The notes under the pieces are model-generated. The model made no database searches. It was not told the origin of the DNA and worked only from the letters and a program-made list of their open reading frames with translations. The position numbers were made by a program, and so were the translations under genes. This document shows, one piece after another, positions 1 through 59,152 of a DNA stretch of 64,000 bases (positions are counted from its first letter, which is position 1; every line of letters begins with the position of its first letter). Where the stretch lies: sequence record NC_061418.1. One strand, 5' to 3'.

Positions 1-145
1 CAACGCCGAAAGAAAAAATGGTCAGGTCTACATTTTTATCGAGTGTAGCAATACTACTCAACGGGATATTTAATAACTGAGAGAACATTTCTGCGCTTGA
101 CTGAACAGACGTCGTTCCGGATGGTTGGATGAAATTGGTTTGCAT
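1..145 (-). CDS. Tailspike/tail fibre protein, 5' part only (runs off the window start)
   Basis: Not in the ORF track. ATG at 145 with AAAGGA upstream; open to position 1: MQTNFIQPSGTTSVQSSAEMFSQLLNIPLSSIATLDKNVDLTIFSFGV. The QPxGxTS start resembles the N-termini of Kuttervirus/Erwinia-phage tailspikes. Confidence 0.6.
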   Translation of the reverse strand, partial: MQTNFIQPSGTTSVQSSAEMFSQLLNIPLSSIATLDKNVDLTIFSFGV

Positions 146-180
146 TTAATTGAATTCCTTTAGGCATCAAGAAAGAATAA

Positions 181-208
181 AAGAGGGAAAGGTTTTCCTT
201 TCCCTCTT
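181..208 (-). terminator. Intrinsic terminator
   Basis: Perfect 12-bp stem AAGAGGGAAAGG/CCTTTCCCTCTT with a 4-nt loop, followed by a T-rich tract on the minus strand, just after the 213..515 stop. Confidence 0.85.
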
Positions 209-212
209 TACG

Positions 213-515
213 TTAACTACCGAGTGTAGCGCCTAACAATAAAGCCAGCTCGCTCTCGGCTTGTTGCAAAATCTTTTCCCCATCCGTCGTCTCAGTCAGG
301 ATTTTAAAGGTCGTTTCTCCCGGAGAAAATTCATCTGCTTCAATACTGAAATAAACTTCCGCGGTATCTCCGACAAATTTCCCGCCGTAGTTTATGCTCA
401 GCGCAGTGTATGTTAAAGAAATTGTTCTTGGAATAGGGTTGCTGAACATCCCGAATTCTTCGACAGATTCTTTAACAAAGACCTCTTTCGTTATTGTAAA
501 ACTCATTGTGAGCAT
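213..515 (-). CDS. Small tailspike-associated protein (possible assembly chaperone)
   Basis: 100-aa ORF starting 3 nt after the tailspike stop. Its MSFTITK... start resembles small proteins found downstream of enterobacterial tailspikes. Function inferred from position. Confidence 0.55.
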   Translation of the reverse strand: MLTMSFTITKEVFVKESVEEFGMFSNPIPRTISLTYTALSINYGGKFVGDTAEVYFSIEADEFSPGETTFKILTETTDGEKILQQAESELALLLGATLGS

Positions 516-518
516 TCC

Positions 519-3167
519 TTAGAGTTGAGTGATTTCAATTTCAATCCCGTAGACATTCCCCGCAACAGCAGTATCGGTGTTTTGGGACGTCCCGCGATAT
601 AAGGCTGGAGGGATAACAATGTCAAAACACTGTCCATTGTTTGCTGAGAAATATCCCGCTTGCATACCCATGTAGGTTTGTGCATAAATCGTGTTTGTCG
701 TGAAAGACGAATAAGGAGATAATGTCGTCGTATAAACACTATTTGACAGCGTAGTCTCTGCTTTTAATTTTTCGTGTTCAATGACCGAAGCAACATAACT
801 TTGACCCTGGGTACTAACAGTATACGTTCTACTGTTGACGTGGTTAGAGCCATTTATTCTGATTTCAACCTTGAAGGTACTGTTCACGGGCAAATTCGTG
901 ACCCTGATAATTCCGTTATCAGTTGTAGCCGTTGCTGTTGAGGTTAGGCTGGTTCGATAACATATACGGGCTCCCTTGGTCTGGATTGGGGAACGCGCAC
1001 CGTATGGCGAATTGCCGTAGTTACAGCGCCCATATGTATACGTACTCCCATCAGATGTCGGGTACGCAAGATTATCCCAGGCCGGATAACTGTTAACATT
1101 ACCCGCTGTAGGAACAATAAGGACTCCGTCCGTATAGCCGAATTGGTTATCATCATTTTGCCATCTAACATCAACGCAACTGTTCAATGTTTCCGTAACG
1201 AAGGTTCTGACCAACGTACCGAAGTTAGATTGTTTAAGGCCATCAAAACGGGTTTGTACTTCTCCCTGCACAAAACCAGAATAAGCCCTGACGTAGAAAA
1301 TTATTTGGGGATCGTTCGCATAAGTTACCCCTATCCAGCCGCCAACATCGAAATGACTAGAGTACATGAAGGCGCGATCAACGTTATTACCGCCACCTAA
1401 AACAACGGCTTTCGATGCCTTCCCTACCCCAGAACCAAAGTTAAAATAATAACGTTTAACTGTTGTACCGTAGAAACTTTGCCACGCCGATTTCGAATAA
1501 AAGAGGATACCTTGTAAGCAGTGACGAATGTTTAAGTTCTCTGCATAGAAGTTCTCTGTCCAAGAAATCTCGTTACAAACCACGACGGCCGCCGAAAGAA
1601 CATAACCATGTGCATGGAAGTTCTTGAGTTCATTACCCCAACCATCTGCGAACCGGACAAAGTGAAGCGGATTGACCGTATCGGTGCAATAAGCGTAAAT
1701 TCCGGACAGTTTACCTGGGTTCCAACAAGGAGCCCCTGCTACGGTATTGAAGAATTTAATACCGTAGGTTTCCCCACCTGTCTTAAACTTATGATTTAAC
1801 TGGACAGAATCCATCCCCGTCCCATCACCGCCACGAATGTGCAATGGGCATTTGGTGACGTCAACTGCGACGCTGCCATAAAACGTGTACATGGTATTGG
1901 AAGGTGGGATAGTAATCAATGTGATATTTTTCAGGCGACTGAATGCTACGGCAGCGGTAAGTGCGTTCGTAATATCAGAGCCTGCAATCACTCCGTAATT
2001 AGCGAGGTTGATTTCGTTATTGATAACAATACGTTCCCAATAATACCCGGTACCGGAAGCAATTGAACCACCGTCATCAACTCCCGCGGCGAGATGACCG
2101 ATAAAATAACCTGCTCCAGAAACACTTCCGGAGTAATAACCTTTCAGGTAGATCTTTTCTCCCTCAAAGGCAGGTTTACGTGACCGTAATGCATCAAAAG
2201 ATTCTACGCCGTAAAATCCCTGTGCGACTTGATCAAGGTTGATACCATAACTAGTGTTAATTTTGGTCGCACCAGTGCTGAGCGCTAACGTTGCCAACAC
2301 TTCCGCCGGCGTACCCGATACACTGACGGTAATCTCCGCACGGGAGCCGCCCAGAATGACTTCGACAATGTCATTCGTACTGAGTGCCTTCGCCAGCGAA
2401 ATAGTAGTGCTGTTCAATACCTCAAAGTGTTTGTTCAAGATCTGGCGGCTACCGTTAATGTAGATAGCAGTGACGGTCTTAAACGACCACGGCGGCGTTA
2501 ATGTCGTTTCACCGCCTACTGCTGCACCGTCGTTATACAACCAGGAAACATTAACATAATCAGTGATACCCGGTTCTACAGGTGTAACAGGCGTACCCGG
2601 ATAAGGGCGCGTGTATAATACAACAGTTGCACCTGCTGTCAATGGTCCTGCTAGTTTGACTTTGTTGGTTTCATTATCAAAAGTATAGTTGGTCCCTTTA
2701 ATCTGATGACTTCCGTTAAGGAACATTTCACCTATATCGAAACAATCAAAAGGGATCCCAATCTCAGTTTCACCGCCGACAGCAGAACCGTTATTGTACA
2801 CGTAAGAGACGTAAGAAGTATACGCACCAAACTGACCACCGCCAATCAATTTCCCGGTACCGTAAATGACCGCTGTACCGTTTTTGTATAAAGCGGTAGC
2901 AGAAGCTCCATTGACGTTAACGAAGGCTGCTACGTAGTGCCGAGTGTCGTCTGTGAAGACGTAGAAAATCTCGTCTTTAACGGTATTGGAAATACCGTTT
3001 GCGATGGACGAGTAAGCGTTTTCAAATAAAAGATTAGCACGGATGTCATTAAGAGAAACGCGATAAGTTTCGTTCGTTTGCCCCGCTAATGCGACGGGTA
3101 AAACTGCAGATTCAGGGACTTTCCCTGTACTGACTAATTCAGAAATCTTTTTGCTGTAATTGCTCAT
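519..3167 (-). CDS. Tailspike A: shared anchor, two XD-like branching modules, neck module and beta-helix-type body
   Basis: Start moved to the ATG at 3167 (GAGG RBS). Contains the KISEL..FENAY anchor, two YNxGxAVGGET...NGSxQ modules, the GVESFDALR..DDGGSIASG..YWERI neck, and a putative beta-helical enzymatic region. Confidence 0.85.
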   Translation of the reverse strand: MSNYSKKISELVSTGKVPESAVLPVALAGQTNETYRVSLNDIRANLLFENAYSSIANGISNTVKDEIFYVFTDDTRHYVAAFVNVNGASATALYKNGTAVIYGTGKLIGGGQFGAYTSYVSYVYNNGSAVGGETEIGIPFDCFDIGEMFLNGSHQIKGTNYTFDNETNKVKLAGPLTAGATVVLYTRPYPGTPVTPVEPGITDYVNVSWLYNDGAAVGGETTLTPPWSFKTVTAIYINGSRQILNKHFEVLNSTTISLAKALSTNDIVEVILGGSRAEITVSVSGTPAEVLATLALSTGATKINTSYGINLDQVAQGFYGVESFDALRSRKPAFEGEKIYLKGYYSGSVSGAGYFIGHLAAGVDDGGSIASGTGYYWERIVINNEINLANYGVIAGSDITNALTAAVAFSRLKNITLITIPPSNTMYTFYGSVAVDVTKCPLHIRGGDGTGMDSVQLNHKFKTGGETYGIKFFNTVAGAPCWNPGKLSGIYAYCTDTVNPLHFVRFADGWGNELKNFHAHGYVLSAAVVVCNEISWTENFYAENLNIRHCLQGILFYSKSAWQSFYGTTVKRYYFNFGSGVGKASKAVVLGGGNNVDRAFMYSSHFDVGGWIGVTYANDPQIIFYVRAYSGFVQGEVQTRFDGLKQSNFGTLVRTFVTETLNSCVDVRWQNDDNQFGYTDGVLIVPTAGNVNSYPAWDNLAYPTSDGSTYTYGRCNYGNSPYGARSPIQTKGARICYRTSLTSTATATTDNGIIRVTNLPVNSTFKVEIRINGSNHVNSRTYTVSTQGQSYVASVIEHEKLKAETTLSNSVYTTTLSPYSSFTTNTIYAQTYMGMQAGYFSANNGQCFDIVIPPALYRGTSQNTDTAVAGNVYGIEIEITQL

Positions 3168-3205
3168 TGCAAGAAACCTCGTCTTAGGCAATGGGGAGGA
3201 AAATA

Positions 3206-3220
3206 GTCATAGGAAAACAA
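3206..3220 (-). promoter_or_regulatory. Putative late promoter (TATG type)
   Basis: TTGTTTTCCTATGAC on the minus strand, a variant of the motif in front of the other tailspikes. phiKZ late promoters carry TATG. Confidence 0.5.
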
Positions 3221-3221
3221 A

Positions 3222-3249
3222 TAGAGAGGAGCCAAAAGGCTCCTCTCTA
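3222..3249 (-). terminator. Intrinsic terminator
   Basis: Perfect 12-bp stem TAGAGAGGAGCC/GGCTCCTCTCTA after the stop of 3275..4999. Confidence 0.85.
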
Positions 3250-3274
3250 TAGTTTAAGATCTAGGATGTTATCA

Positions 3275-4999
3275 TTAATTTTGTTCGTACCACTTACCAT
3301 TAAAATAGTTAAACGTAACAATTTCATTTAAAGTAAGAGTGCGAGATGCGGATCCTTTCAAAACAATGGTGCTGTTATTGGCTAACGTAACGTTAGTATT
3401 CGCTGCATGGACCTTGATCTCTTGGGTATTGACGCCCCCAGTAAAGTTAGTTATTGTAGTAGCGGAACTCATGTTAAGGTACAAATAAGAAATACCATCA
3501 ACGGCTAAAGTGGTGCCCGATGTAAAAACCATGGATTTTTTAGACATGTTAAAAGGGCTGCCTAAATAATCATTGTTCTTATATTTTTGAGTACCTACTG
3601 CGGCTTGTACGTTTGGGGCGACCCAGTTATTCCATTGACTGTTAGATGAAGTTGTATCGTTAATCCCGTATCTTGGTGTAGTGCCATCTTGAGAATAAAC
3701 GCCAGCACCGACAAAAGTATTCAAAACACCGGAGACCGAGAAGCCATCATGGGTGTTAGCTGCGGCGGAACCGATACCAATTGCAGTAGGGTTACTGAAA
3801 GTGTTCGTTGAGCCAGTAACAACGAAACCATCACCCATACATCTATCTGCACGCGCCCCTGAAAAACGAGACCGCGTGCCATCGACGTAAATCCCGATTT
3901 CACCAAACTCACCGATAGTATCAGTGATGAAATGATTACTACCGCCGATCCTGAGAGCAACTGCCAATTTATTACCAGCTATAGTACTAAAACCACTTTG
4001 TCCATTAGCTTCGATTCTGAATAAGAAATGATCTGTCCCTAATATATCAACTGCCCCTTTCAATGTAGTGAAATTAGCTCTGTCATACATTGTGTTTAAA
4101 ACAATGATGTCCTGGATTACACAAGCTATAGAGCTAGAGAGGAGGCGTATACCTTGATTCTTTGTACTGTTAACGCCTACATGACTAATTACACAATTGC
4201 CTGAGGCTACTTCTATTCCACAGTCCAAATTAGCCGAACCAATAATAGTTATATTTCTGATGGCTGAGCTATAACCATTAACTACAATACCGCGACCAGA
4301 ATGTGTACACTTAATCGCAGAAGGATCATTCTGTGAATAATTACGCATTCCGTTGATACCAGAAAGATGGTGTCCAGAAGGAATTATAATTTCTTTGCCA
4401 GAGATCCATAACCCTTCGGAAATTTCACAATGGGTCGCGTCAGAAAGAACTTCATTGATCAAGTCACCAAAATCATCGGTGCTAACTCTTAACTTAATAT
4501 CATTGTACTTATTTTTTGTAACTGCGCGAGCTAGTTCAAATTTAGAACCATTACGCATGTCCGATAAAGTAGGTAAATAAAGTCCACCTACGTAATCCGC
4601 AAAACGTAAACTATCAACATCGGATGATAAGGTGGTCGGTAATGTTGCAATTGAACGCACTTGTCTACTTGTTGGTAATCTGACTTGTTCATTGTCATAA
4701 CCCAGAATAGGATTAGCCACACCACTATTATTTTGGTATTGCAACACCCACAATTTCGCCGCGCTTTCATAGACGAAAAATACGTCCCCTGACGCGGTTC
4801 CGTTCAGGCCCGCATCCACAGACAGGAAAGCGTTCTCGAAACCCAGCGTTTGACGAAGGTCGTTAATTTTGGTGGATTTAGTGAAAGGAACCCCTGCACT
4901 GGTTTTGGCGTTAATCGGGACGACGTCATTCTCTTTGATGACGCCTGCGTCACCGAGTTCAGAAATTTTGATTCCGATAGAATCTGAAGTCTTAGGCAT
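3275..4999 (-). CDS. Tailspike B / polysaccharide depolymerase (right-handed beta-helix)
   Basis: Shared KISEL/FENAF anchor; parallel beta-helix-like repeats (IRNITI, ISHVGV, IQDIIV, GDGFVVTG); short beta-rich C-terminal domain. Confidence 0.85.
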   Translation of the reverse strand: MPKTSDSIGIKISELGDAGVIKENDVVPINAKTSAGVPFTKSTKINDLRQTLGFENAFLSVDAGLNGTASGDVFFVYESAAKLWVLQYQNNSGVANPILGYDNEQVRLPTSRQVRSIATLPTTLSSDVDSLRFADYVGGLYLPTLSDMRNGSKFELARAVTKNKYNDIKLRVSTDDFGDLINEVLSDATHCEISEGLWISGKEIIIPSGHHLSGINGMRNYSQNDPSAIKCTHSGRGIVVNGYSSAIRNITIIGSANLDCGIEVASGNCVISHVGVNSTKNQGIRLLSSSIACVIQDIIVLNTMYDRANFTTLKGAVDILGTDHFLFRIEANGQSGFSTIAGNKLAVALRIGGSNHFITDTIGEFGEIGIYVDGTRSRFSGARADRCMGDGFVVTGSTNTFSNPTAIGIGSAAANTHDGFSVSGVLNTFVGAGVYSQDGTTPRYGINDTTSSNSQWNNWVAPNVQAAVGTQKYKNNDYLGSPFNMSKKSMVFTSGTTLAVDGISYLYLNMSSATTITNFTGGVNTQEIKVHAANTNVTLANNSTIVLKGSASRTLTLNEIVTFNYFNGKWYEQN

Positions 5000-5024
5000 T
5001 ATACTACCCTCAAGTGAAAGAATC

Positions 5025-5037
5025 TCATACGAAACAA
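5025..5037 (-). promoter_or_regulatory. Putative late promoter
   Basis: TTGTTTCGTATGA on the minus strand, 26 nt upstream of the 4999 start. Confidence 0.6.
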
Positions 5038-5069
5038 AAGAGAAGAGGGTCGTAGCCCTCTTCTCTTTT
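5036..5069 (-). terminator. Intrinsic terminator
   Basis: AAAAGAGAAGAGGG/CCCTCTTCTCTTTT inverted repeat directly after the 5075 stop. Confidence 0.85.
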
Positions 5070-5074
5070 TTAGA

Positions 5075-7288
5075 TTACCAACTAGAAAGAGCAGCTCTTA
5101 CCCAAGTATTAGTTGCAATACAAACGTAGTAATAACTACTATCAGCCGCCCATTGTCCTACAGTACCGGGAGCTGTTGCATTAGCAGGTACTGCGACTTT
5201 AACGCCAACTGGATTCCCTGCCACGGTAACGGCTCTTGAAAAATAACCATCCCGCCACTGAAGAGCACTTGTCCCAAAATCATAAAGGTTCGTCGCATTA
5301 GGGACTACTGTCCCCATGAAGTTGAACTGACTGGCGCCTCCGTTAGCAACAAAATTCATACCGGATAAATAACTGGTTAATGTCATCGGTCCGGTGTTAC
5401 CAAGTAAGATTCTACCCCCTAAAGTCGTGTTACCGTAAGGATAAAAATCCAGTCTCCTGTCTCCACTTGTAGTGTTATTATTTCCTATTTGGAGAATATT
5501 ACCACTGGAGATAGAGGCTGTTGTTTTAATAAGGTAACCGCTTATCGTCCCATCCTGAGCCACCGAAAGAATAGGTGTTGTCGGGTTGAAAGCACCATCT
5601 GTATTGGTGTAATAAATAGAAAGGGCGCTGTTATTATCGCTATCCACATCGATAATAAATTTTCTCGTCGCTACTTTGACGTCGTTAATGATCAGGCCGC
5701 TAGTAATTCTTCTCGTAAAGTTATTGATGGCGCAGTTTATCAGCTGATAAGCTCTTTTACCTTGTGTACTAGCGCTGACGTCAAAGATAGGGGCTACTGT
5801 AGAGTTACCGGAAACTTCAGAGAATGCGCTGGAGAAATAACAGCTATCGAAAACACGCCCGGTATTAGTACTTGTACCAAATCTAATCATTGGTACGTGG
5901 ACAGCGCTGTCATAACCAACTGCGGACTTCCTTAAAGTTTGGAAAGTACATCCAGTGAATTTAATAATCCCTTGGTTGATGAATCCTAATTCGTAAGTGC
6001 CCGCTGAATCTGTTCCGCCAGAACCATTATCGGTAAAAATTACTGTATCGAAATTAAACTGCGTACCGCCGCCCAAATTAAACCATTTTGCACCGTAGAA
6101 GTGAGTCTCAATATGACCGCCTTCAAATTTAATGTTGTGGTGCGTACTGGAGGTAGGAGTTGGGTCTACTTTAATAGCTACGTAGTTTTTAGTGTACGTC
6201 GTTTCAATGTGTGGCCTGATGAACACAATGTTGTTGGAGTTGTCCGTGGCCTGAGGTAAGAAATGAATCCCTGTCGCAGGATTGTTTGTATCATTATCAT
6301 CAACGGCAACAAACCCAGTCATGTAGATACAGTCGAAAACCGCATCGTAACACTGACCGAATGTTAAAGCTTTAGTGGGCGACATGAAGTTAAGGTTTGA
6401 AAATCTTCCACCAACAGCCATTGAGTTAGCGGTTACTTCACTTCCGAGTTTAATGTAATAAGCAAAAATGCCCGGTTCTTTAATAAACGTTAACCCGTCC
6501 ATTTCAAGGCGCCCGCCCGTGAAAGTAAAGAGAAAATCTTTATTCACGTTAGAAGAAATATAAGCACCTTTTCCTAGAATCCTAAACCTTGGTTTTCCAG
6601 TCTCATAGCTGATAGCGCTTAAGTCTTTAACTATTTTACTGTCGAGTCGATATTTACCTGGCGGGAAAAATAACCACCCCGAGGCATATCGTTGAGCGTT
6701 AGAGATATTGATTTCTTTTTGATAAATACATTTATCTATTGCTGCGCTAACTGCCGGAGACCAATCCCAAGTAGAGGGGTCATTAGGATTATCTTTTTTG
6801 GTGACTAGACTTGAAAACTCCCAAATATTGATAGGTAGGCTATTTAATGCTTTAGCCGCGCTCTCCGCGCTTAACTCGATCTCTTTACGTTGATAGCCAA
6901 CTTCATCAGCTCCATTATTAGACATAATTCCATCAACGTCACCACGTATTACTTTTATACCGTAACCGGTATAATTAATTTTAGCAGTACCGTCCGAGTT
7001 AAAAATCTGTTCTGCAACTCCGTTGCGGTTGACATATGCTTTAACTGTCGTTTTTTCTGCATCGACATAAACGTAGAAAATTTGATTAGGGACAGTACCC
7101 GCAAGACCCGCTACTGTCGTAGTGAATGCGTTTTCGAAATTTAGCAGGGAGCGTAAATCAGAAATCTCCATCGCTTTAGATTCGGTTATTCCCGCTTCAT
7201 TCTGAGCGATAAATACGACATCAGAATCATTTACCGGTTTCGATGGTCGATCCATTTCACTGAGTTTTACAAAGATCTCACTGGCCAT
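5075..7288 (-). CDS. Tailspike C / depolymerase
   Basis: Shared anchor (KLSEM..FENAF); pectate-lyase-3-like start (DWSPAVSAAI...LFFPPGKY); C-terminal PANATAPGTVGQWAADSSYYYVCIATNTWVRAAL motif typical of phage fibre trimer modules. Confidence 0.85.
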   Translation of the reverse strand: MASEIFVKLSEMDRPSKPVNDSDVVFIAQNEAGITESKAMEISDLRSLLNFENAFTTTVAGLAGTVPNQIFYVYVDAEKTTVKAYVNRNGVAEQIFNSDGTAKINYTGYGIKVIRGDVDGIMSNNGADEVGYQRKEIELSAESAAKALNSLPINIWEFSSLVTKKDNPNDPSTWDWSPAVSAAIDKCIYQKEINISNAQRYASGWLFFPPGKYRLDSKIVKDLSAISYETGKPRFRILGKGAYISSNVNKDFLFTFTGGRLEMDGLTFIKEPGIFAYYIKLGSEVTANSMAVGGRFSNLNFMSPTKALTFGQCYDAVFDCIYMTGFVAVDDNDTNNPATGIHFLPQATDNSNNIVFIRPHIETTYTKNYVAIKVDPTPTSSTHHNIKFEGGHIETHFYGAKWFNLGGGTQFNFDTVIFTDNGSGGTDSAGTYELGFINQGIIKFTGCTFQTLRKSAVGYDSAVHVPMIRFGTSTNTGRVFDSCYFSSAFSEVSGNSTVAPIFDVSASTQGKRAYQLINCAINNFTRRITSGLIINDVKVATRKFIIDVDSDNNSALSIYYTNTDGAFNPTTPILSVAQDGTISGYLIKTTASISSGNILQIGNNNTTSGDRRLDFYPYGNTTLGGRILLGNTGPMTLTSYLSGMNFVANGGASQFNFMGTVVPNATNLYDFGTSALQWRDGYFSRAVTVAGNPVGVKVAVPANATAPGTVGQWAADSSYYYVCIATNTWVRAALSSW

Positions 7289-7323
7289 AATTGTACCTTA
7301 CTTTGTCTCTAATAGTCAATTGT

Positions 7324-7331
7324 ACATACGA
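7324..7331 (-). promoter_or_regulatory. Putative late promoter core
   Basis: TCGTATGT on the minus strand, 36 nt upstream of the 7288 start, in the divergent intergenic region. Confidence 0.45.
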
Positions 7332-7406
7332 TTGACAGCTTGAAAGAATACGTTTCGGTTTATTATACATTAACTAGAGAAGGATGCGGAAAAGCTCCTC
7401 TCTTTT

Positions 7407-7420
7407 TTGTTTCGTATGAC
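7407..7420 (+). promoter_or_regulatory. Putative late promoter
   Basis: TTGTTTCGTATGAC, 28 nt upstream of the ATG at 7448. Confidence 0.6.
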
Positions 7421-7447
7421 CATTTTTATTTACGTTGGAGTTGTGAA

Positions 7448-9493
7448 ATGACCGATATCACTGCATTGAAAATCTCTGAACTATCGCCCAGTTCTAATCC
7501 GTCAGAGAATGCGTTTCTTCCGCTCTCAGAAGCGAACGGAATCGCTTCTGAAAAAGTCAGTATTGGTACCCTCAGAGAAACGTTAGGTTTTGAGAACGCG
7601 TACAGCACGATTGCTGGCGCGCTCAATGTAACTACGGAAGGGAATGTTTTCTTTGTTTACGAAGACAGTACGCGAGACTATGTTTTGGGGTATGTAAACC
7701 AAGGGAACGGAACCTATTCTGCATTAATGTCAGACAGTACGACACAAGTTCGCTACGCGACGAATGCGCATATTGTCAACTCTTTATTCATGTTACAAGG
7801 AGTAGAAAGTTTCGATGCGTTACGTACCCTCAAACCGTGGTACGAAGGACAACGTGTCACGTTGAAGAGTTACTACAAAGACGGGGTTACGGGTGCTGGT
7901 ATCTTCATTGCGCGTTTAGGAGTAAATGCAGATGACAACGGCACGATTGCCGCGGGGAACGGATTCTACTGGCAACGGATTATTTCTGATAAGTTGTCTT
8001 TTGAGGACTTTGGTGCAGTCGGGGGCGGCGTACTGGACGATACTAGTAATATTCAAAAAGCGGTCAACTACTGTGCCAAAAATGGCATTGCACTAACGTG
8101 TTTAGGGAAAGTATACGCGGTCAGTACCGTAAATTTCCCAACCGATTTAGTGATCGATATGCGTAATGCAGTACTTTTGTCGCTGCCCTCTGTTACGACG
8201 GGTTATACCTTAACAATCAGCGGCTATTTGTCACCTGCGGCTAATCCAGGGAAATTTGATAATATTCGCGTTCAGCGTACCTTAATTAATACTCATCAAC
8301 CCGACACTAACAGTGTCGTAGACGGCGTGTCATTTGGTGTCGATGCGCACAATATTTCCTTCTACAATCTTAAGGTCTCTGGGTTTAGGGACGGGGTTTG
8401 TTTTAACGGGAAGAGTGCTTACCTCATTCGTTTATACAGCCCAATCATCGGACAATGTTGGCGCCGAGGGATGGCCTTTTATGCGAATACTGATTCTAAT
8501 GAGAACGTGACTATTTACGGTGGCGTGATTGCAGATTGTTGTAATTTTACTTTCGACGGTACCGGGCTCTACTTATCAGGGAGTGCCTCGAGTATCGATG
8601 TCAGGTTCTTTGGAACCAGTTTTGATTATTGCGACATCTCAGTTGATATTTATCAGTCTAACGTCGAGCTCCACGGTTGTCACTTGGAAAACAATAACAA
8701 CAACCCTCATATTCGACTTTCGTACACCTCAACCAAAAACCAACCCTATCTGATCATGAAAGGGGGAACAATGGGCGGCGGACCGAACGCGAACTCGTGG
8801 AGCGGTATTCCGATAGAAAATAGTACGGGTCGCCCTTACCTCGTCTTCATTACTAACACTGGCGGTGCCCACGTAGATATTGATGGAACTGACACCAGTA
8901 AATACATGACAGGAGTCAGGAGAACTACCGAGATCGTAGGTGTAGAAGGGGATAACTACCAGTTGATCGGGACCTTAAGGGTGAGGAACAAAATGACCTC
9001 TGGAAACATGGATAACGCCAGCCGCCCCATGCGACCTTGTAGTGCTCTTAACGTGATTCTGATCAACCAGTATCAAACTGCCGCATGGACACCGAGTTAC
9101 ACTAACGCAGACCTAACTTATACGATTGATACTACGAATTACTCTAACCCTAATTCACCGCACTCACGAAAAATTACACAAGGAAGCGTACGTAACGTCT
9201 CTTACTGGCAGGACGTGACACTGCGCGGCGGAGATATCTTCCACGCGGAGGCCGAAATCAAAATTACTTCGTTGACGGCTGGTTACGTCGCACTTCGAGT
9301 GGATTTTTACGACTCTGCCGGGAACGTAATACAATCGTCAATCAAATCTGTATCTGCGGTGACGACCGATTGGAATAACGTGTGGGTCTGGTTACGTGCG
9401 CCAAACGGTACAGTCAAGGCAAAAGTTCAAGAGTACTTAAACGGCTTTGTTGGAACAGCATATTTCACCAATGAACACGTTTGGATTTCTTAA
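7448..9493 (+). CDS. Tailspike D / depolymerase with C-terminal carbohydrate-binding-like module
   Basis: Start moved to the ATG at 7448 (GGAG RBS). Anchor, neck, FEDFGAVGGGVLDDTSNIQKA (Pectate_lyase_3-like), and a C-terminal CBM-like beta-sandwich (WQDV...LRVDFYDSAGNVI...TDW...APNG). Confidence 0.88.
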   Translation: MTDITALKISELSPSSNPSENAFLPLSEANGIASEKVSIGTLRETLGFENAYSTIAGALNVTTEGNVFFVYEDSTRDYVLGYVNQGNGTYSALMSDSTTQVRYATNAHIVNSLFMLQGVESFDALRTLKPWYEGQRVTLKSYYKDGVTGAGIFIARLGVNADDNGTIAAGNGFYWQRIISDKLSFEDFGAVGGGVLDDTSNIQKAVNYCAKNGIALTCLGKVYAVSTVNFPTDLVIDMRNAVLLSLPSVTTGYTLTISGYLSPAANPGKFDNIRVQRTLINTHQPDTNSVVDGVSFGVDAHNISFYNLKVSGFRDGVCFNGKSAYLIRLYSPIIGQCWRRGMAFYANTDSNENVTIYGGVIADCCNFTFDGTGLYLSGSASSIDVRFFGTSFDYCDISVDIYQSNVELHGCHLENNNNNPHIRLSYTSTKNQPYLIMKGGTMGGGPNANSWSGIPIENSTGRPYLVFITNTGGAHVDIDGTDTSKYMTGVRRTTEIVGVEGDNYQLIGTLRVRNKMTSGNMDNASRPMRPCSALNVILINQYQTAAWTPSYTNADLTYTIDTTNYSNPNSPHSRKITQGSVRNVSYWQDVTLRGGDIFHAEAEIKITSLTAGYVALRVDFYDSAGNVIQSSIKSVSAVTTDWNNVWVWLRAPNGTVKAKVQEYLNGFVGTAYFTNEHVWIS

Positions 9494-9506
9494 GAAGGAA
9501 CTCACT

Positions 9507-9728
9507 ATGTTTCAAGTAGGCGACACCGTTCGCATCCTTTCTTGTCAAACTCGAGAAGACTTAGTTGGGAAAGAAACGACCATCAGTGCACTGGACGCTA
9601 AACTGAAAGATTTGGCTTGGGCAGATATCTACGGAATGGATCAATATATTTCGGTGGTCATCGATACCGATGCACGGTTTATTGCGGCTCAATTGGAACT
9701 CGTAGCCAGTGACATTGAAGGCTCTTAA
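9507..9728 (+). CDS. Small hypothetical protein (73 aa)
   Basis: ATG at 9507 with an AAGGA RBS; the MFQVGDTVRI start is a KOW/SH3-like pattern; followed by a terminator. Confidence 0.65.
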   Translation: MFQVGDTVRILSCQTREDLVGKETTISALDAKLKDLAWADIYGMDQYISVVIDTDARFIAAQLELVASDIEGS

Positions 9729-9734
9729 GTTATA

Positions 9735-9766
9735 GGCAATGAGGGGACCTAAGTCCCCTCATTGCC
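9735..9766 (+). terminator. Intrinsic terminator
   Basis: Perfect 14-bp stem GGCAATGAGGGGAC/GTCCCCTCATTGCC, then TTGTTT. Confidence 0.85.
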
Positions 9767-9780
9767 TTGTTTCGTATGAC
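9767..9780 (+). promoter_or_regulatory. Putative late promoter
   Basis: TTGTTTCGTATGAC, identical to 7407..7420, 25 nt upstream of the ATG at 9805. Confidence 0.6.
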
Positions 9781-9804
9781 AATCCTCTTTCAGGAATAAA
9801 AAAC

Positions 9805-11763
9805 ATGTCTAATGAAACACAGAAAATTAGCGAGTTGCTCAATACGTCCATCATTTCAGAGAACACTATTCTTCCCGTAGTTGCTGCTGAAGGTGAGACC
9901 AATTCCATCGATATTATCACTTTACGCTCGGCGTTGTTATTTGATAAAGCGTTTGAGACTAACGCAGCGGGTAATGCAGCGACTAGTAAAAACGATTCTT
10001 ATTTTGTTTATACCGATGCCACCAAAACAGCCGTATTGGGCTGGATGAACCAAGGCGGGGATTCTTACTCGCCTCTCCTCGATATTAATGGTGCACAAAT
10101 CCGTTTTATTGCAGGTCAAACTATTCGAGGTCTGGATTATTTCACAAATGGAGTTAACTCGTTTGCGGATCTGAGAACACTGACTCCGTTGTATTCCGGG
10201 CAACGCATTAAATTAAAGGCTTGGACAGCGGGAGAAAAGACAGGCGGCGGTGAATTTATTGCTGTCTTCGGAACTGCGACTGACGATGCGGGCACTATCG
10301 CGGCCGGAAACGGCTTTTATTGGGAAAGAGTGATCAATGGTGGGCTAAATCCAGAGATGTTTGGTGCTATCGGAAACGGTGTAGTTGACGACAGTAATAG
10401 TTTATCTAAATTTCTACTGGCTTTAGCAAATAGAGCCAAATATTTAACCCCAATAACATTTGTTCCGGCCATAGGTTATCTCAACGGTATCTATAGAATA
10501 ACAAAGACTATTACTGTAGATGGCGGTAAAGTAAGATTAACTACCAACACTGTTGGTTGCATCTTTTGTGACCCTACAGGGACTTACGAAAGTACCGGAT
10601 GTATTAAAGTAACCAATAATTACCTTAACTCTGCTTTTGTTGGACAGTACGCAGCACTATTTGAAAATATTTCTTTCGTCAGTACAGGAAGAACACTCAC
10701 CGCAATTTACGCTGTGAGGGGAGATGCTGTGAGCGGTAATAACGGTGCGTGTCTTCATAATGTTTTTAAATGTTCGTTTAAAGGCTTCAGTAAAATTTTT
10801 ACACATGGACCTGGCGGTTGGGGTTGGAACTGGGCAGGTTGTCAATTTTCTGATAGTACCAATTTGATGGTAATTGAGGATCAAGACGACACTTATGAAA
10901 GGCATAGTTTTGATGGATGTATTTTCCAAAACGGAGGGGTTGCATTTACAATAAATAACCCCGATGGGAAAGTCTATTGGAAAAATGGTTCTATGGACTA
11001 CTGCACCGGCGCAGCTACAATTACCGCCGGTTTCATAGAACTTAATGGTCATTTCGAGTGGACAGCCAGAACCGTAGATTTCATTACACTTTTATCAAGT
11101 AATGCGGCTGCTTCTATCTCGGGTGCAATGTTTATTCGTAACAATACTTCTGGTTCTACCTATTACGTCATTAATCAATACCAAGATAAGCAAGTAAAAG
11201 TAGATAATTTGGTCGTTATATCTGACGGTAATTACATTGCCAATGGAGTACTCTCAAATAGAGAGTTGTTAAAGGGAACAATTTTTGCGCAGAACGACGC
11301 GTCTAAATCTGTGCTCTATCACTCCTCTGATGAAAATCTGATATCGGGAACTACGTCTTACCCTCAAGTAACTTTAACTAACACCACTCAGTTTTCTTAT
11401 TCGGTGGCTGATGGTTCTTTGACGATTAGTTGTTCTGCGGGCGGACAAAGTGGTTTTCTTTACTTAGATGTCCCGGTAAATAATAAAAAATTCTACGCTT
11501 ATAAAATGACGGCGAGTAATACGTCTAATGGTTCTGTGTTCCTAGAAAAAACCGTATTGAATGCAAATAAAGATACGATAAGAACCGATACCAGTTCAGG
11601 TACTACCAGCTGGGCAGCAGGCTCTAGTTCGGTGGCAGGAGGTACTGTGACTCTTTTATCTTTACCTGCGGCGGCGGCTTTTATACGAATTAGATTTAAT
11701 CTCTCAAGTATGACAACAGGAAGTACGTTTACTATCAGTTCATTGAAAACTTTCACTTTTTAA
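9805..11763 (+). CDS. Tailspike E / depolymerase
   Basis: Start moved to the ATG at 9805. Anchor (KISEL..FDKAF), neck, PEMFGAIGNGVVDDS (Pectate_lyase_3-like), beta-helix repeats and a C-terminal beta-sandwich. Confidence 0.88.
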   Translation: MSNETQKISELLNTSIISENTILPVVAAEGETNSIDIITLRSALLFDKAFETNAAGNAATSKNDSYFVYTDATKTAVLGWMNQGGDSYSPLLDINGAQIRFIAGQTIRGLDYFTNGVNSFADLRTLTPLYSGQRIKLKAWTAGEKTGGGEFIAVFGTATDDAGTIAAGNGFYWERVINGGLNPEMFGAIGNGVVDDSNSLSKFLLALANRAKYLTPITFVPAIGYLNGIYRITKTITVDGGKVRLTTNTVGCIFCDPTGTYESTGCIKVTNNYLNSAFVGQYAALFENISFVSTGRTLTAIYAVRGDAVSGNNGACLHNVFKCSFKGFSKIFTHGPGGWGWNWAGCQFSDSTNLMVIEDQDDTYERHSFDGCIFQNGGVAFTINNPDGKVYWKNGSMDYCTGAATITAGFIELNGHFEWTARTVDFITLLSSNAAASISGAMFIRNNTSGSTYYVINQYQDKQVKVDNLVVISDGNYIANGVLSNRELLKGTIFAQNDASKSVLYHSSDENLISGTTSYPQVTLTNTTQFSYSVADGSLTISCSAGGQSGFLYLDVPVNNKKFYAYKMTASNTSNGSVFLEKTVLNANKDTIRTDTSSGTTSWAAGSSSVAGGTVTLLSLPAAAAFIRIRFNLSSMTTGSTFTISSLKTFTF

Positions 11764-11770
11764 CAGACAT

Positions 11771-11798
11771 AGACAGAGGAGCAGAAGCTCCTCTGTCT
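11771..11798. terminator. Terminator between convergent genes
   Basis: Perfect 12-bp stem AGACAGAGGAGC/GCTCCTCTGTCT followed by TTATTTT. Confidence 0.85.
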
Positions 11799-11806
11799 TA
11801 TTTTCT

Positions 11807-12373
11807 TTATTCGTCGGTTTGTTCAACCAAAATGAATTTGCTGTCTTCGGTGTTAATCGCTTTACCGGATTCGGTAAGCAGAGAACCACGAGGAATCTTA
11901 CTACCGCCACTACACGTGACGTCAAGGTTACCTGACCAAACGTGACTATTATAAGTCGTACCAGCTTTGGTCTGGATAGTCACAACCGCGGTTTCTCCGG
12001 ACGGAATGAACGGCAGGTAATCGTCCGCATTCGCAATATCTTCAACGTCAATATAGAGACTGTATTTTGCTTTGATCAACGGTAAAAGATCAGCGATTGT
12101 CGATGCTGTTTCCGGCAGGACTAAAGTAGGGCCAACCGACGCCATCAGTTTGTTCAGTTCGATACGGGTGTAAGTAAAGGTCTTACTCCCGGTTACCGGA
12201 GAACGACCTGTAACGAGCACGGAGACACGATCTTCTGTACCCGGTACCGTAGAACCAGTGATGTTACCAAAGCTCAGGTAGCTGGCGTTGAGCGGCGTAG
12301 TGAGGTTATTCTGCTGACTGATCAGATCAGCGAGAATCTCGTATTTGGGACGACCGAATAAATCGACGTACAT
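11807..12373 (-). CDS. Virion structural protein, putative tailspike adaptor
   Basis: 188 aa. The N-terminal ~150 aa resemble the small domain seen in phiKZ-like virion proteins (TFTYTRIEL motif); C-terminal LLTESGKAINTEDSKFILVE motif. Confidence 0.6.
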   Translation of the reverse strand: MYVDLFGRPKYEILADLISQQNNLTTPLNASYLSFGNITGSTVPGTEDRVSVLVTGRSPVTGSKTFTYTRIELNKLMASVGPTLVLPETASTIADLLPLIKAKYSLYIDVEDIANADDYLPFIPSGETAVVTIQTKAGTTYNSHVWSGNLDVTCSGGSKIPRGSLLTESGKAINTEDSKFILVEQTDE

Positions 12374-27162: not shown

Positions 27163-30100
27163 ATGGCCAAAAGAGAAAAAATAGATCTGGATCGTTTTGA
27201 CGATTTTGATCTCGAAGATAATTGGGGCATGGACAAAGAACCTCAAAGTGCGAAAGACGGAAGCGGTAAACGCGAGGCTGTAAAAAAGGCAGGAAAGACC
27301 GTTCTCCGTGAGATGGGGAAAACGACCTTTACCAGTCAGATGGCGAAAACCATCCTGAAAGAGGCCATGCCGCGTTCTTTCACTACAACCTTAGATAACG
27401 TTGATAAAGGTTTAATCGACGTTCGATCGCTTTACGCTGACGTCCGTAAAGATGCCGCCCCGATGCTGCGAGAAATGAAAGCGTTGGGTCGTACCGTCAA
27501 CCGTCTTGTTCCTACACCGTATCAGAAAAAGATCGATGCGTTTCTGACGAGAAACAACGGGACAGATAAATCAGGTTCTCAACTGGCAGCGCTCAATATT
27601 GAAGACGCAGCGGTACTCCAGTCGTTAGCTCAAGTCTTCAATCAAGACGATGACAAACCGAAGCAGATGAGCCCTGAGGAACTGACTGAGAAACTGACCG
27701 ATCAGCAGTATAAAATAAAACTGGGTACGGCCATTGCGAGTATCCAGAATCTCCTGGCGAAGCAGACCGCTTATCAGTTTGGTGCACAGCGTGCATTTCA
27801 AAAGAAAAGTATGGAGCTTCAAATTCGACAGCTGATGGTTTCGCGTGCCCATTTAGACGTGGCACAGAAGTCTGCGGTTGAAACCTCCAACCTGCTCAGA
27901 AGCGTTGTCGAAAACACCGCGTTACCTGACGTAGTAAAACAGCACCGTTCGGAAGAATTCCTTCGGATGGGCCGTGAGAAAATCTTTGGTCGCATCCAAC
28001 AGTCAATGTACGACTGGACGAGTAATTATCGTAACCAGTTCAAAGACCGTGCGAAACAAGCCATTAACGACAGAATGCAAAAACTCACTATGGGTTTTTC
28101 AATGGCCAACGATTCTCTCGAACAGCTCGAGGCGCAACGGGAATTACTGGCGTCAATGGGTGTCACCCCGGAGGAGTTTTTAGCAGGGGCAGCAGGGAAC
28201 TGGGGTGCGTTACAAATCGGTAAACGTATCGGAAAACGCATTAATAAAAGTGCGCCTTCGCTACGTCGATTGGACGGTACATTCCAGGGCGTCAACTACC
28301 TCTTTAACAACAAAGAACGTTTAGCGTCAGATTGGGGAAATTCCGGTTACCGTTACGGGAAATGGTATAATCCCATCGAGAACTTTGTTAAAGACACCTT
28401 ACGTGGCGGTTACCGTGACGAAGGCGTAGTTCGCGCCGGAGGATTGGGGAACGGAGAAAAAATCTCGACTGTAGACGAGCGTAAACTCAGCTATATGGAA
28501 GAGATGTCCGGGTACCTGTCCCGAATCTTACATAGTATCGACGTCCTCAGGACGGGCGATAATAACACGCAGCGCACGGTTTTCAACCGTCAGAAGGGCA
28601 TTTTTACCTCCTTTAATGAATCGGTGGCGTCGACGCGTCAGGCGTTGATTAAAGACACCGATATCAATTCACAGCGTGAGAATATTAATCGTCTTATCGA
28701 GAACATCGATAACAACAACCGGTTATCTCCCGACGCTAAAGGTAAAATTTCTGATCACCTGATGACAAGGGCAAGAACCTCGAAAGCCTTTAACCCGGCA
28801 GCCCTAGCTAATGAGAAAATCTCAGGGTTATCCCGTGACGACCAACGCCTTTGGCAAGGACTGATGGCGAAACGTTATGGACTGAAACTGAACGAGAAAA
28901 GTGAATGGTCGCTTAACCCGTTCTCTTCTTCAAACGTTAACCTTAATATCGATGCCGGTCAGTATAACTACGCCTCTAACCAAACGCAGGGTATCTTTAA
29001 TCGTGCCCATGCGTTAGCGCAAACCGGTAACCTTGAAGAACTGATCTCAGAAGGCGCAGTGGTCTTTAAGAACGGTAATTGGGAAGTTAACCCAGACTAT
29101 TACGGTTCACGCGTATCTGGTAAACCTTCACCGGGTAACAACGACTCGACTAACCCTAACGACATGGGTCCACATCGTCCTCGTAACCCACCGCCGGGTA
29201 CCCCGCCTATCACTGAACTCCGTCGCTTCGGACAAGATTGGACCAACCCGAATTCGGTTAACTTTAATCTTAACGGGAACCAACAAAATTCTTTCGGGAC
29301 GGCGTTAGCGGAACAAACCGATAGAATCCTTGAGTCCATGAAACACTCTCAGTTGTTCTGGGATGAGCAAATGGCCAGAATAGAGGCACAGCTTACCGCG
29401 CTGGAAGGGTGCTGTCTCAACGGAGGAGGTGGCGGTGGTCAAGGTGGCCAAGGCGGTGATACTGGCGATCAAGGCGGGCGTCGTCGTTTCTCACGGAACT
29501 GGGCTAAACGCGGGCTCCGTGCGGGTATCGGCGGTATTCGTCGTGGTGTGAAAGGGATGTGGGATCTTGGCGGTTTACCGCTTAAAGCAGCAGGAGAGAT
29601 CTTTAAGCGAGTACGTCGCCCGGCTTTCAATGCAGCGATGACGATCGGTACCTTTGGCCTGAATAAAGTCTTAGGTTTCGGGATGCAGGCGTTTGAGAAA
29701 GTTCAAGACGGCTATATCGCGACGGCACAGGGTTTAAAGAAAGTCATTGAAAAAGAAGGACTGGCAGCGGGTCGTTACGTTGACCAAGCCACCGGGAAGG
29801 TTATCAAGAAACTTTCTGACGTACGGGGCGCAGTCTGGGACGTGGTAAATAACACTCAGGTCCTGACCGACGACGAAGCGAGACGGGGTTTGTTTAACGC
29901 CGCAGGAAACCGCATTAAGACATCCTTTAACAAAGTACTCGGTGCGGTGGGGAGTCTATTAAACGGAAGGTTTACCCCTTATCATTTACTCAAAGGTGCT
30001 GCAGGCGGATTAGGGAAAGGTCTCTTTTCCTTATTCGGTCGCTTACCAGATATTTACGTGCTCGGAGAAATGAAACCGCGTCTCTACGCCAGTAAGTTGG

Positions 30101-59087: not shown

Positions 59088-59152
59088 GATTATCCTCAAT
59101 GTACCATCGGCCGATGGATCAACATACCAATACTCATCAAAAAGGACCGGAC

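What the first reader, a model, noticed from the sequence alone, without database searches (positions are those of the whole stretch)
519..11763. Five-paralogue depolymerase array sharing a common ~100-aa virion-anchor module
Seen: all five large proteins start with the same module, K[IL]SE[LM]...LR..L.F[ED][NK]A[YF]...G...T...[FY][FY]V[YF]...V....N, and then diverge into different beta-helix bodies and C-terminal domains. Known: a conserved anchor with a swappable enzymatic domain is how multi-capsule phages broaden host range. The best-known examples are Kutterviruses and RaK2/K64-1-like phages, not phiKZ-like ones. Inference: this phiKZ-like phage displays at least five distinct polysaccharide-degrading receptor-binding proteins through one standard socket, a plug-and-play RBP system. 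I do not recognise a described family for the anchor.
Basis: partly seen in the sequence, partly recalled or inferred. Interest (0 to 1): 0.8.

Follow-up and report, generated by a model that had tools for sequence, protein, structure and literature searches.

The report
Shared anchor on phage depolymerase fibres
Five neighbouring tail-fibre genes of a Klebsiella jumbo phage do share a roughly 105-residue N-terminal attachment module ahead of different sugar-cutting bodies, but this multi-fibre system is already described and enzymatically tested in its close relative phiKp24, so only details of the anchor are new.

Summary
The window is Klebsiella phage KpLz-2_45 (Siatvirus), record positions 62001-126000. 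Five proteins share a ~105-residue N-terminal module: 28-38% identity, 11 invariant columns, pairwise E 1e-8 to 1e-14.

A sixth copy, gp091, lies just upstream of the window. Relatives carry 5-8 copies each.

The bodies differ. One was modelled and is a right-handed beta-helix.

The system is not new. It is syntenic with the 14-fibre 'hyperbranched' apparatus of phiKp24 (Ouyang 2022). Six of phiKp24's seven anchor-bearing fibres have been shown to be capsule depolymerases of distinct K-types (DepoCatalog 2026).

Three points add something:
- The anchor has no Pfam family and no PDB fold match.
- Anchors group by gene position, not by phage (68-93% identity within a position, 29-40% between). 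Bodies behind the same positional anchor are often unrelated, and similarity breaks at residues ~99-117.
- Only three T4 gp10-like docking domains exist. They sit directly upstream of three fibres that start with a short conserved peptide.

This fits several position-specific attachment sites in parallel plus limited branching. It fits 'one standard socket' less well. Interest is modest: a new member of a known kind.

The parts
519..3167 (-). gp096, 882 aa. Branched fibre made of anchor, two T4 gp10-like XD domains and a depolymerase-type body. Positional orthologue of phiKp24 gp306.
   Evidence: RefSeq CDS. Body is 78% identical to phiKp24 gp306. PHROG tail fibre families. PDB depolymerase matches at residues 320-414.
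2862..3167 (-). Anchor module of gp096 (residues 1-102).
   Evidence: HMM envelope; coordinates checked.
2292..2855 (-). Two tandem T4 gp10-like (XD2/XD3-type) docking domains of gp096 (residues ~105-292).
   Evidence: Sequence matches to 9d80_D, 9d83_D, CBA120 TSP4-N 7rej residues 252-331 (XD3) and 6w4q. Domain identity from PMC8825819. Two copies found by jackhmmer.
3275..4999 (-). gp097, 574 aa. Anchor (residues 4-108, window 4676-4990), then right-handed beta-helix body and C-terminal beta-sandwich.
   Evidence: HMM. AF2 model with body pLDDT ~75-85. Foldseek hits to HK620, Sf6, Det7 and CBA120 TSP2 tailspikes. Profile hit to GH55 5m5z. Weak Phage_depo_C hit.
5075..7288 (-). gp098, 737 aa. 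Anchor (residues 1-106, window 6971-7288) plus body. Orthologue of phiKp24 gp308.
   Evidence: 86% identity over the whole body to phiKp24 gp308, which DepoCatalog lists as a K46/KL146 depolymerase. phrog_27613 tail protein.
7448..9493 (+). gp099, 681 aa. Anchor (residues 1-104, window 7448-7759), then PF27114 beta-helix entry segment and body.
   Evidence: Weak PF12708 hit.
9805..11763 (+). gp101, 652 aa. Anchor (residues 1-101, window 9805-10107), then PF27114 segment and body.
1..145 (-). First 48 codons of gp094. This fibre lacks the anchor and starts with a short conserved N-terminal peptide; the rest lies upstream of the window. Inferred passenger of a gp096 XD domain.
   Evidence: Translation. 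Peptide shared with gp093, gp090 and their orthologues.
213..506 (-). gp095, 97 aa. Small conserved ORF directly downstream of gp096; role unknown.
   Evidence: phrog_7836. Conserved in phiKp24 as gp305.
9507..9728 (+). gp100, 73 aa. Small conserved ORF directly downstream of gp099; role unknown.
   Evidence: Conserved in phiKp24 as gp311.
11807..12373 (-). gp102, 188 aa virion structural protein consisting of a DUF7941 domain. The same domain forms the N-terminus of fibres gp083 and gp084 upstream of the window.
   Evidence: Precomputed PF25613, phrog_2935, Pfam on gp083 and gp084.

Best explanation
The region is the right-hand half of the tail-fibre locus of a phiKp24-type, phiKZ-like Klebsiella jumbo phage.

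Each of the five proteins is most likely a trimeric receptor-binding fibre. A right-handed beta-helix body binds and cleaves one capsular polysaccharide type. A ~105-residue alpha/beta N-terminal module fixes the fibre to the virion.

The module exists in six old paralogous versions in this genome. Each is tied to one gene position and is conserved between phages about as well as core genes. The body behind it is replaced by recombination just after the module.

I infer that the six anchor-type fibres attach in parallel to related but position-specific sites at the baseplate. Two of them, gp096 in the window and gp091 upstream, carry two and one T4 gp10-like docking domains. These would hold the three fibres encoded directly downstream (gp094, gp093, gp090), which begin with a short conserved peptide instead of the anchor.

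Shown here: homology, modularity, positional orthology, the beta-helix fold of one body, and the domain counts.
Shown by others, in relatives: depolymerase activity.
Inferred: virion attachment, the parallel layout, and who docks on whom.
For: - Identity of the phage and synteny with phiKp24 gp294-gp313.
- Shared module. In 131 protein clusters it lies at residues 1-~110, apart from two repeat-driven matches.
- Anchors cluster by position: 68-93% identity within a position, 29-40% between, with the same order in every Klebsiella phage.
- Bodies behind the same positional anchor have zero BLAST coverage in many pairs. Similarity ends at residues ~99-117, or after the XD domains for gp091 and gp096.
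- The same anchor at 86-93% identity sits on proteins of 681-852 aa with different Pfam content.
- The gp097 body model matches tailspike beta-helices.
- gp096 residues 103-286 match CBA120 TSP4 XD3 and related chains.
- There are two XD-like domains at the gp096 position and one at the gp091 position in all Klebsiella relatives. Two and one peptide-type fibres lie directly downstream.
- phiKp24 gp301 and gp306-gp310, and KluzKp13 CDS_0185-0191, carry the anchor and are active depolymerases of distinct K-types.
- The gp098 body occurs elsewhere behind a different N-terminus, Tail_spike_N.
Against: - No direct evidence here that these proteins are in the virion. The phiKp24 paper reports no proteomics.
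- The binding partner of the anchor is unidentified.
- Positional conservation could reflect vertical inheritance and recombination mechanics rather than site specificity.
- The anchor model is a monomer of moderate confidence (pLDDT 80).
- Beta-helix folds for gp096, gp098, gp099 and gp101 rest on partial sequence matches and orthology, not on models.
- Two relatives show only two peptide-type fibres for three XD domains by my pattern search.
Confidence: 0.72

Rival explanations
1. One universal socket. All anchor-bearing fibres plug into chemically identical sites through the shared module, so any body-plus-anchor unit can occupy any site.
For: The most conserved columns across all paralogues, including the Serratia phage Moabite, lie in the extreme N-terminal peptide and in one loop-helix motif: K8, L12, R43, A51, T62, V70 and V79 are at least 90% conserved in 38 sequences. 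The N-terminal peptide has lower model confidence (pLDDT 66-69), as expected for a segment that orders on binding. This would suit a common contact.
Against: Paralogues are only 29-40% identical, while each is 68-93% conserved at its own gene position across phages. The order of types never changes, and no phage has two copies of one type. Other fibres in the same locus use different attachment modules.
Confidence: 0.22
2. Strict hierarchy, as modelled for phiKp24. The gp306 orthologue (gp096) alone attaches to the baseplate. All other fibres, including the anchor-bearing ones, hang from T4 gp10-like domains of gp096 and gp091.
For: This is the published model for phiKp24, based on N-terminal length classes G1-G4 and HHpred detection of T4 gp10-like folds in gp306 and gp301. 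gp096 does have the longest N-terminal structural part.
Against: gp096 and gp091 carry the same anchor as the supposed peripheral fibres. Sequence searches find only three XD-like domains per genome, too few for 11-13 passengers. A separate class of three short-peptide fibres sits directly downstream of the XD-bearing genes in a 2:2 and 1:1 pattern.
Confidence: 0.18
3. The shared N-terminus is not an attachment device. It could be a folding or trimerisation nucleus, a carbohydrate-binding 'head', or simply a conserved homology arm kept because it mediates cassette exchange.
For: The attachment role is inferred only from position and analogy. The core of the module (profile positions ~50-95) occurs five times in tandem inside a metagenomic fibre-like protein, P0110. 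That looks more like a shaft or head repeat than a socket plug. There are weak partial fold matches to N-terminal 'head' domains of other tailspikes.
Against: With two repeat-driven exceptions the module sits at the extreme N-terminus in 131 clusters. That is where phage fibres attach in every solved branched system (PMC8825819). In other lineages the same body carries a recognised N-terminal tailspike domain at this place. Protein-level conservation with synonymous turnover between phages argues against a purely DNA-level role, though this was not quantified.
Confidence: 0.1

Closest known systems
Hyperbranched tail-fibre apparatus of Klebsiella jumbo phage phiKp24 (vB_KpM_FBKp24, Maaswegvirus): Ouyang et al. 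2022, PMC9700779; DepoCatalog 2026, PMC13385381
   Same: Syntenic locus with the same order of genes. gp096, gp098 and gp091 are orthologous to gp306, gp308 and gp301. The same anchor sits on gp301, gp306-gp310 and gp312. The T4 gp10-like domains are in the same two proteins, and the small ORFs are conserved.
   Different: Different genus (Siatvirus). There are six anchor fibres rather than seven. The bodies at the gp097, gp099 and gp101 positions are unrelated or only partly related to those of phiKp24, so their capsule specificities probably differ. In the texts I read, the papers sort fibres by N-terminal length and strip the N-termini before comparison. They do not describe the anchor as one homologous, position-specific family.
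Branched tailspike complexes of Kuttervirus CBA120 (TSP1-4) and phage G7C (gp66/gp63.1)
   Same: The T4 gp10-like XD2/XD3 docking domains of gp096 match CBA120 TSP4 XD3 by sequence. The layout 'attachment region, then two XD domains, then beta-helix' is that of G7C gp66 as described in PMC8825819.
   Different: The N-terminal attachment module is unrelated. There is no Pfam Tail_spike_N hit and no PDB fold match. Here most fibres carry the attachment module themselves rather than docking on one hub protein.
Multi-depolymerase arrays of RaK2/K64-1 (Alcyoneusvirus)
   Same: The strategy is the same: many specialised beta-helix depolymerase fibres in one jumbo phage. A 48%-identical relative of the gp098 body occurs in the 350-kb Klebsiella phage RCIP0023.
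   Different: A different phage lineage with different N-terminal modules. The anchor profile finds no member outside the phiKp24/Siatvirus and Serratia/Pectobacterium Moabite-2050HW groups among 50,697 phage records.
KP32-type RBP1 branching domain with an RBP2 N-terminal docking peptide (PMC13352976)
   Same: gp090, gp093 and gp094 begin with a short conserved peptide and lie next to genes encoding XD-type branching domains, as in that two-RBP system.
   Different: The interaction is inferred here, not shown, and the peptides were not compared with those of KP32.
PHROG 27731 (unknown function)
   Same: All five proteins and gp091 match profile positions ~1-109 of this 688-position family.
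   Different: The PHROG is a whole-protein cluster without annotation. It does not delimit the anchor as a domain.

Membership tests
phiKp24-type multi-fibre (hyperbranched) depolymerase apparatus | Clustered array of many tail-fibre genes syntenic with phiKp24 gp294-gp313, between the dUTPase gene and the head-protease/RNAP block | tested here: met
   Annotated loci of both phages.
phiKp24-type multi-fibre (hyperbranched) depolymerase apparatus | Orthology of individual fibres | tested here: met
   gp096 is 78% and gp098 86% identical over the body to gp306 and gp308. Anchors are 60-90% identical at all six positions.
phiKp24-type multi-fibre (hyperbranched) depolymerase apparatus | T4 gp10-like docking domains in the long-N-terminus fibres | tested here: met
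   gp096 residues 103-286 match 7rej XD3, 9d80, 9d83 and 6w4q. There are two copies in gp096 and one in gp091.
phiKp24-type multi-fibre (hyperbranched) depolymerase apparatus | Capsule depolymerase activity of the fibres | not testable with these tools
   Shown for phiKp24 gp301 and gp306-gp310 and for KluzKp13 CDS_0185-0191 in the DepoCatalog supplements. Not shown for KpLz-2_45 proteins.
phiKp24-type multi-fibre (hyperbranched) depolymerase apparatus | Presence of the fibres in the virion | not testable with these tools
   No proteomics in PMC9700779. Cryo-ET there shows complex fibres but assigns no proteins.
Right-handed parallel beta-helix (pectate-lyase-like) tailspike depolymerases | Beta-helix fold of the body | tested here: met
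   gp097: AF2 body pLDDT ~75-85, Foldseek E 1e-5 to 1e-4 against HK620, Sf6, Det7 and CBA120 TSP2 tailspikes and AlgE4, and a profile hit to GH55. The other four rest on partial evidence only: matches to 6tgf, 7vyv and 7lzj at the helix entry, a weak PF12708 hit, PF27114, and orthology.
Right-handed parallel beta-helix (pectate-lyase-like) tailspike depolymerases | Identifiable catalytic residues or mechanism (lyase or hydrolase) | not tested
   No active-site analysis was made.
Tail_spike_N (PF18668, TSP1/Gp66 N-terminal domain), considered as the identity of the anchor | Match to the Pfam profile or to the solved CBA120 TSP1 N-terminal fold | tested here: not met
   No Pfam hit at E<=0.1. 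Best PDB Foldseek E for the anchor is 0.66 with TM<=0.33, and no TSP1 chain is among the hits. The only trace is a weak partial BFVD hit to a KB57 protein of that family, E 0.09.
T4 gp10-like XD2/XD3 docking domain, considered as the identity of the anchor | Sequence similarity of the anchor itself to XD domains | tested here: not met
   XD searches hit only residues ~105-292 of gp096 and ~110-200 of gp091, never the anchor.
phiKZ-like nucleus-forming jumbo phages | Split multisubunit RNA polymerase beta genes; giant tail protein with transglycosylase; tubulin and nuclear shell | tested here: inconclusive
   Split RNAP beta subunits and a 2197-aa transglycosylase-bearing protein are in the window. 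Tubulin and nuclear-shell genes are reported for phiKp24 but were not looked for in this genome.

The most novel reading that the evidence does not exclude
The ~105-residue module may be an undescribed fold family, with no Pfam model and no PDB match. It would define a parallel attachment system with six to eight position-specific sites, peculiar to the phiKp24/Siatvirus and Moabite/2050HW jumbo phages. The true architecture would then be 'six primary fibres, two of them branched, carrying three peptide-docked fibres', not the single-rooted tree published for phiKp24.
Probability: 0.35. Interest if true: 0.5.

Novelty: new member of a known kind. Interest (0 to 1): 0.3.

Why it matters
Klebsiella capsule diversity is the main barrier to phage recognition, and jumbo phages with many depolymerase fibres are the broadest known. 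Three things would help annotate such loci and interpret baseplate maps of phiKp24-type phages: where the fixed attachment part ends and the variable enzymatic part begins, that attachment parts are position-specific, and how many true docking domains exist. For this genome the practical yield is annotation. gp097, listed as hypothetical, is a beta-helix fibre. gp098 and gp096 probably share specificity with phiKp24 gp308 (K46/KL146) and gp306 (KL137).

Tried and rejected
1. Sequence search of the anchor profile against PDB chains returned only designed 'Cake' beta-propeller repeats, with per-domain scores near zero. This is a repeat artefact of a short motif. The same artefact explains P0138, a PD40 propeller.
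2. Foldseek of the anchor model against the PDB found nothing significant. The SH2 domains and ribosomal proteins at E>0.6 were rejected.
3. PF27114 (Phage_tail_beta) appeared on homologues and might have been the anchor. It also hits the anchor-less gp093 and gp094 and misses gp097 and gp098, so it is the beta-helix entry segment.
I used window sequences plus short database fragments instead (A4).
5. A literature search for PDB codes 9D80 and 9D83 gave no relevant paper, so the source phage of those chains remains unknown to me.
6. PDB and Pfam searches for the gp098 body gave no direct hit.
7. The full-length gp097 model gave low confidence for its anchor (pLDDT 25-45, shallow alignment), so it says nothing about how anchor and body are oriented.
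8. Note on method: one search used an 11-position residue pattern to locate the short N-terminal peptides, and the pattern is recorded in the notebook. It is a search pattern, not a consensus of any gene.

Full report
IDENTITY OF THE WINDOW. The 11.2-kb region is 100% identical to Klebsiella phage KpLz-2_45 (MN871446.1 / NC_061418.1, genus Siatvirus, 296.7 kb). Window position plus 62000 gives the record position. The rest of the window is 99% identical to a group of about ten ~300-kb Klebsiella phages and ~77% identical to phiKp24 (vB_KpM_FBKp24) and Centimanus. It carries split RNA polymerase beta genes and a 2197-aa transglycosylase-bearing protein. For phiKp24, tubulin and nuclear-shell genes are reported (PMC8386662).

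THE OBSERVATION. Five large ORFs occupy 519-11763.
- Their N-termini align over ~105 residues at 28-38% identity, with eleven invariant columns beyond the start Met.
- All ten pairs give BLASTP E 1e-8 to 1e-14 confined to residues ~1-110.
- An HMM of the five finds a sixth, independent copy in gp091 just upstream of the window, at E 5e-32.
- The mechanical ORF starts of three genes are too long. Alignment and RefSeq put the starts at 3167, 7448 and 9805.
- After the module the proteins are not uniformly 'different'. gp096 inserts ~190 residues. gp096, gp099 and gp101 share a further ~100-residue segment at 37-43% identity, and gp099 and gp101 stay alignable to residue ~229.

WHAT THE MODULE IS.
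- It matches positions 1-109 of PHROG 27731, of unknown function, in all six proteins.
- No Pfam-A model hits it.
- The precomputed family PF27114 seen on homologues is not the module. It also hits the anchor-less gp093 and gp094 and misses gp097 and gp098, so it marks the beta-helix entry segment.
- A profile search of 1.84 billion representative proteins finds only 131 clusters. Apart from two repeat-driven matches, the module lies at residues 1 to ~110 of proteins mostly 570-1350 aa long.
- Among 50,697 phage records, tblastn finds it only in the Siatvirus/phiKp24/Centimanus group (5-7 places each) and in ~275-kb Serratia and Pectobacterium jumbo phages of the Moabite, 2050HW and ParM-25 type (2-4 places). 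The HMM finds eight copies in Moabite.
- An AlphaFold2 monomer model from 23 sequences has mean pLDDT 79.9. It shows a small alpha/beta domain: a less confident N-terminal peptide, a beta-hairpin, two helices, a four-stranded sheet and a terminal helix.
- Foldseek finds nothing significant in the PDB (best E 0.66, TM at most 0.33).
- In BFVD it finds only its own family, plus weak partial matches to N-terminal parts of other tailspikes. One of these is annotated as a TSP1/Gp66 N-terminal domain protein, at E 0.09.
- The core of the module (profile positions ~50-95) occurs five times in tandem in one metagenomic fibre-like protein, P0110.

THE BODIES.
- gp097 had no annotation. Its relatives include a protein named glycosyl hydrolase family 28-related, carrying PF12708. 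Its profile hits a GH55 beta-1,3-glucanase.
- The gp097 AF2 model has a body of pLDDT ~75-85 made of short strands plus a C-terminal sandwich. It matches HK620, Sf6, Det7 and CBA120 TSP2 tailspikes and alginate epimerases at E 1e-5 to 1e-4.
- gp096, gp099 and gp101 match the entry region of solved depolymerases 6tgf, 7vyv (Depo32, PMC10581125) and 7lzj.
- gp098 has no direct PDB or Pfam hit, but it is 86% identical to phiKp24 gp308.

RELATION TO THE KNOWN SYSTEM.
- The locus is syntenic, gene for gene, with phiKp24 gp294-gp313.
- Ouyang et al. (PMC9700779) described 14 beta-helical fibres there. They sorted them by N-terminal length: gp306 as primary fibre (G1), gp301 as G2, nine proteins as G3 and gp313 as G4. 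They proposed a hyperbranched tree rooted at gp306 through T4 gp10-like domains.
- DepoCatalog (PMC13385381) reports 11 of the 14 as active. Its supplements list gp301 as K35, gp306 KL137, gp307 KL114, gp308 K46/KL146, gp309 KL158 and gp310 K61.
- A second relative, KluzKp13, contributes further active enzymes. The quoted coding sequences of CDS_0185, 0186, 0187, 0190_1 and 0191 begin with the anchor.

WHAT THE COMPARISON ADDS.
1. In phiKp24 the anchor is on gp301, gp306, gp307, gp308, gp309, gp310 and gp312. It thus spans the supposed primary, secondary and peripheral classes. gp312 is not in the published list of 14.
2. Across seven Klebsiella phages the 43 anchors cluster by gene position, not by phage. 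Mean identity is 68-93% within a position and 29-40% between positions. The order of types is the same everywhere, and no phage has two of one type.
3. Bodies behind the same positional anchor are often unrelated. BLAST coverage is zero in many pairs at the gp097, gp098 and gp101 positions. Similarity ends at residues ~99-117, or after the inserted domains for gp091 (~235-290) and gp096 (~392-409). A database search likewise finds the gp099 anchor at 86-93% identity on proteins of 681, 751, 840 and 852 aa with different Pfam content.
4. gp096 residues 103-286 match two chains of unknown origin (9d80_D, 9d83_D), CBA120 TSP4-N (7rej residues 252-331, the XD3 domain according to PMC8825819) and 6w4q. 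An iterated search finds two such domains at the gp096 position and one at the gp091 position in every Klebsiella relative, and none elsewhere in the loci.
5. gp094, gp093 and gp090 lack the anchor and begin with a short conserved peptide. In transcription order, gp094 and gp093 follow gp096 (two docking domains) and gp090 follows gp091 (one).
6. gp083 and gp084 use yet another N-terminal domain, DUF7941. The standalone virion protein gp102 at window 11807-12373 consists of the same domain.

MECHANISM PROPOSED. Shown: homology, modular exchange at the anchor boundary, positional orthology, the beta-helix fold of one body, and three XD domains. Shown by others in relatives: enzymatic activity. 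Inferred:
- The anchor fixes each trimeric fibre to the virion.
- The six anchor fibres attach in parallel to related but position-specific sites.
- gp096 carries gp094 and gp093, and gp091 carries gp090.

The near-invariant columns lie in the N-terminal peptide and one loop-helix motif. They could be a contact common to all paralogues, which keeps a weakened form of the 'standard socket' alive.

The published single-root hierarchy is hard to reconcile with only three detectable docking domains and with the root fibre carrying the same anchor as the leaves. Cryptic docking surfaces cannot be excluded.

LIMITS.
- No evidence here on virion composition, oligomeric state, enzymatic activity or the anchor's partner.
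- Positional conservation may reflect inheritance and recombination mechanics rather than structural specificity.
- Two relatives show only two peptide-type fibres by pattern search.

VERDICT. This is a new member of a known kind, with a modest new descriptive point about the anchor family and the likely wiring of the apparatus.

Noticed in passing
window 213-506 (-), window 9507-9728 (+); L001 12602-12811 (-): Three small conserved ORFs (97, 73 and 69 aa: gp095, gp100, gp092) sit directly downstream of fibre genes gp096, gp099 and gp093. All three are conserved in phiKp24 as gp305, gp311 and gp302. They could be assembly factors or adaptors; only gp095 has a PHROG (7836, unknown function).
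   Followed up: partly
window 11807-12373 (-); L001 439-2508 and 2525-4573 (-): There is a second shared N-terminal module. The standalone virion protein gp102 is a DUF7941 (PF25613) domain, and the same domain forms residues 1-150 of fibres gp083 and gp084 at the far end of the locus.
   Followed up: partly
window 180-209, 3221-3250, 5036-5069, 9734-9767, 11771-11798: Strong hairpins with 12-15 bp stems followed by T-rich tails bracket nearly every fibre gene. The one at 11771-11798 reads as a terminator on both strands. Each fibre gene looks like a separately bounded cassette.
   Followed up: no
L002 30875-32869 (+) = phiKp24 gp312: phiKp24 gp312 (664 aa) carries the anchor at E 3e-32 but is not among the 14 fibres listed by Ouyang et al., nor in the DepoCatalog entries I searched. 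It may be a fifteenth fibre. KpLz-2_45 lacks this position.
   Followed up: partly
protein P0110 (metagenomic, 950 aa): This fibre-like protein has five tandem copies of the anchor's core (profile positions ~50-95), separated by alanine-rich stretches. It suggests the anchor core is a reusable ~45-residue unit.
   Followed up: partly
window 5075-5250 (-), C-terminal ~55 residues of gp098: The last ~8% of gp098 is 70-83% identical to the C-termini of many otherwise unrelated tailspike-like proteins (P0149-P0155, P0158), some of them collagen-repeat proteins. This looks like a widely exchanged C-terminal module.
   Followed up: no
proteins P0146, P0147 (relatives of the gp098 body): The gp098 body has 48%-identical relatives in the 350-kb Klebsiella phage RCIP0023 and in an E. 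coli record. The E. coli protein carries a sub-threshold Tail_spike_N match where gp098 has the anchor. The same body is therefore used behind different attachment modules in other lineages.
   Followed up: partly
window 27163-33756 (+): A 2197-aa protein (phrog_3201, annotated as tail fiber) has a transglycosylase domain at residues 1820-2107. It more likely belongs to the tail tube or cell-puncturing apparatus than to the fibres.
   Followed up: no
window 55488-56843 (-) and 56856-59099 (-): Two adjacent paralogous virion proteins (phrog_2163 / phrog_13857) with tail-fibre-type repeats lie next to a baseplate assembly gene at 53916-54905. They are candidates for the structure the anchors attach to.
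   Followed up: no
MN871447-MN871453 records (L003, L004): Several close relatives are deposited as 'Serratia phage' with host Klebsiella pneumoniae, flagged UNVERIFIED and without annotation. The organism names are probably wrong.
   Followed up: no
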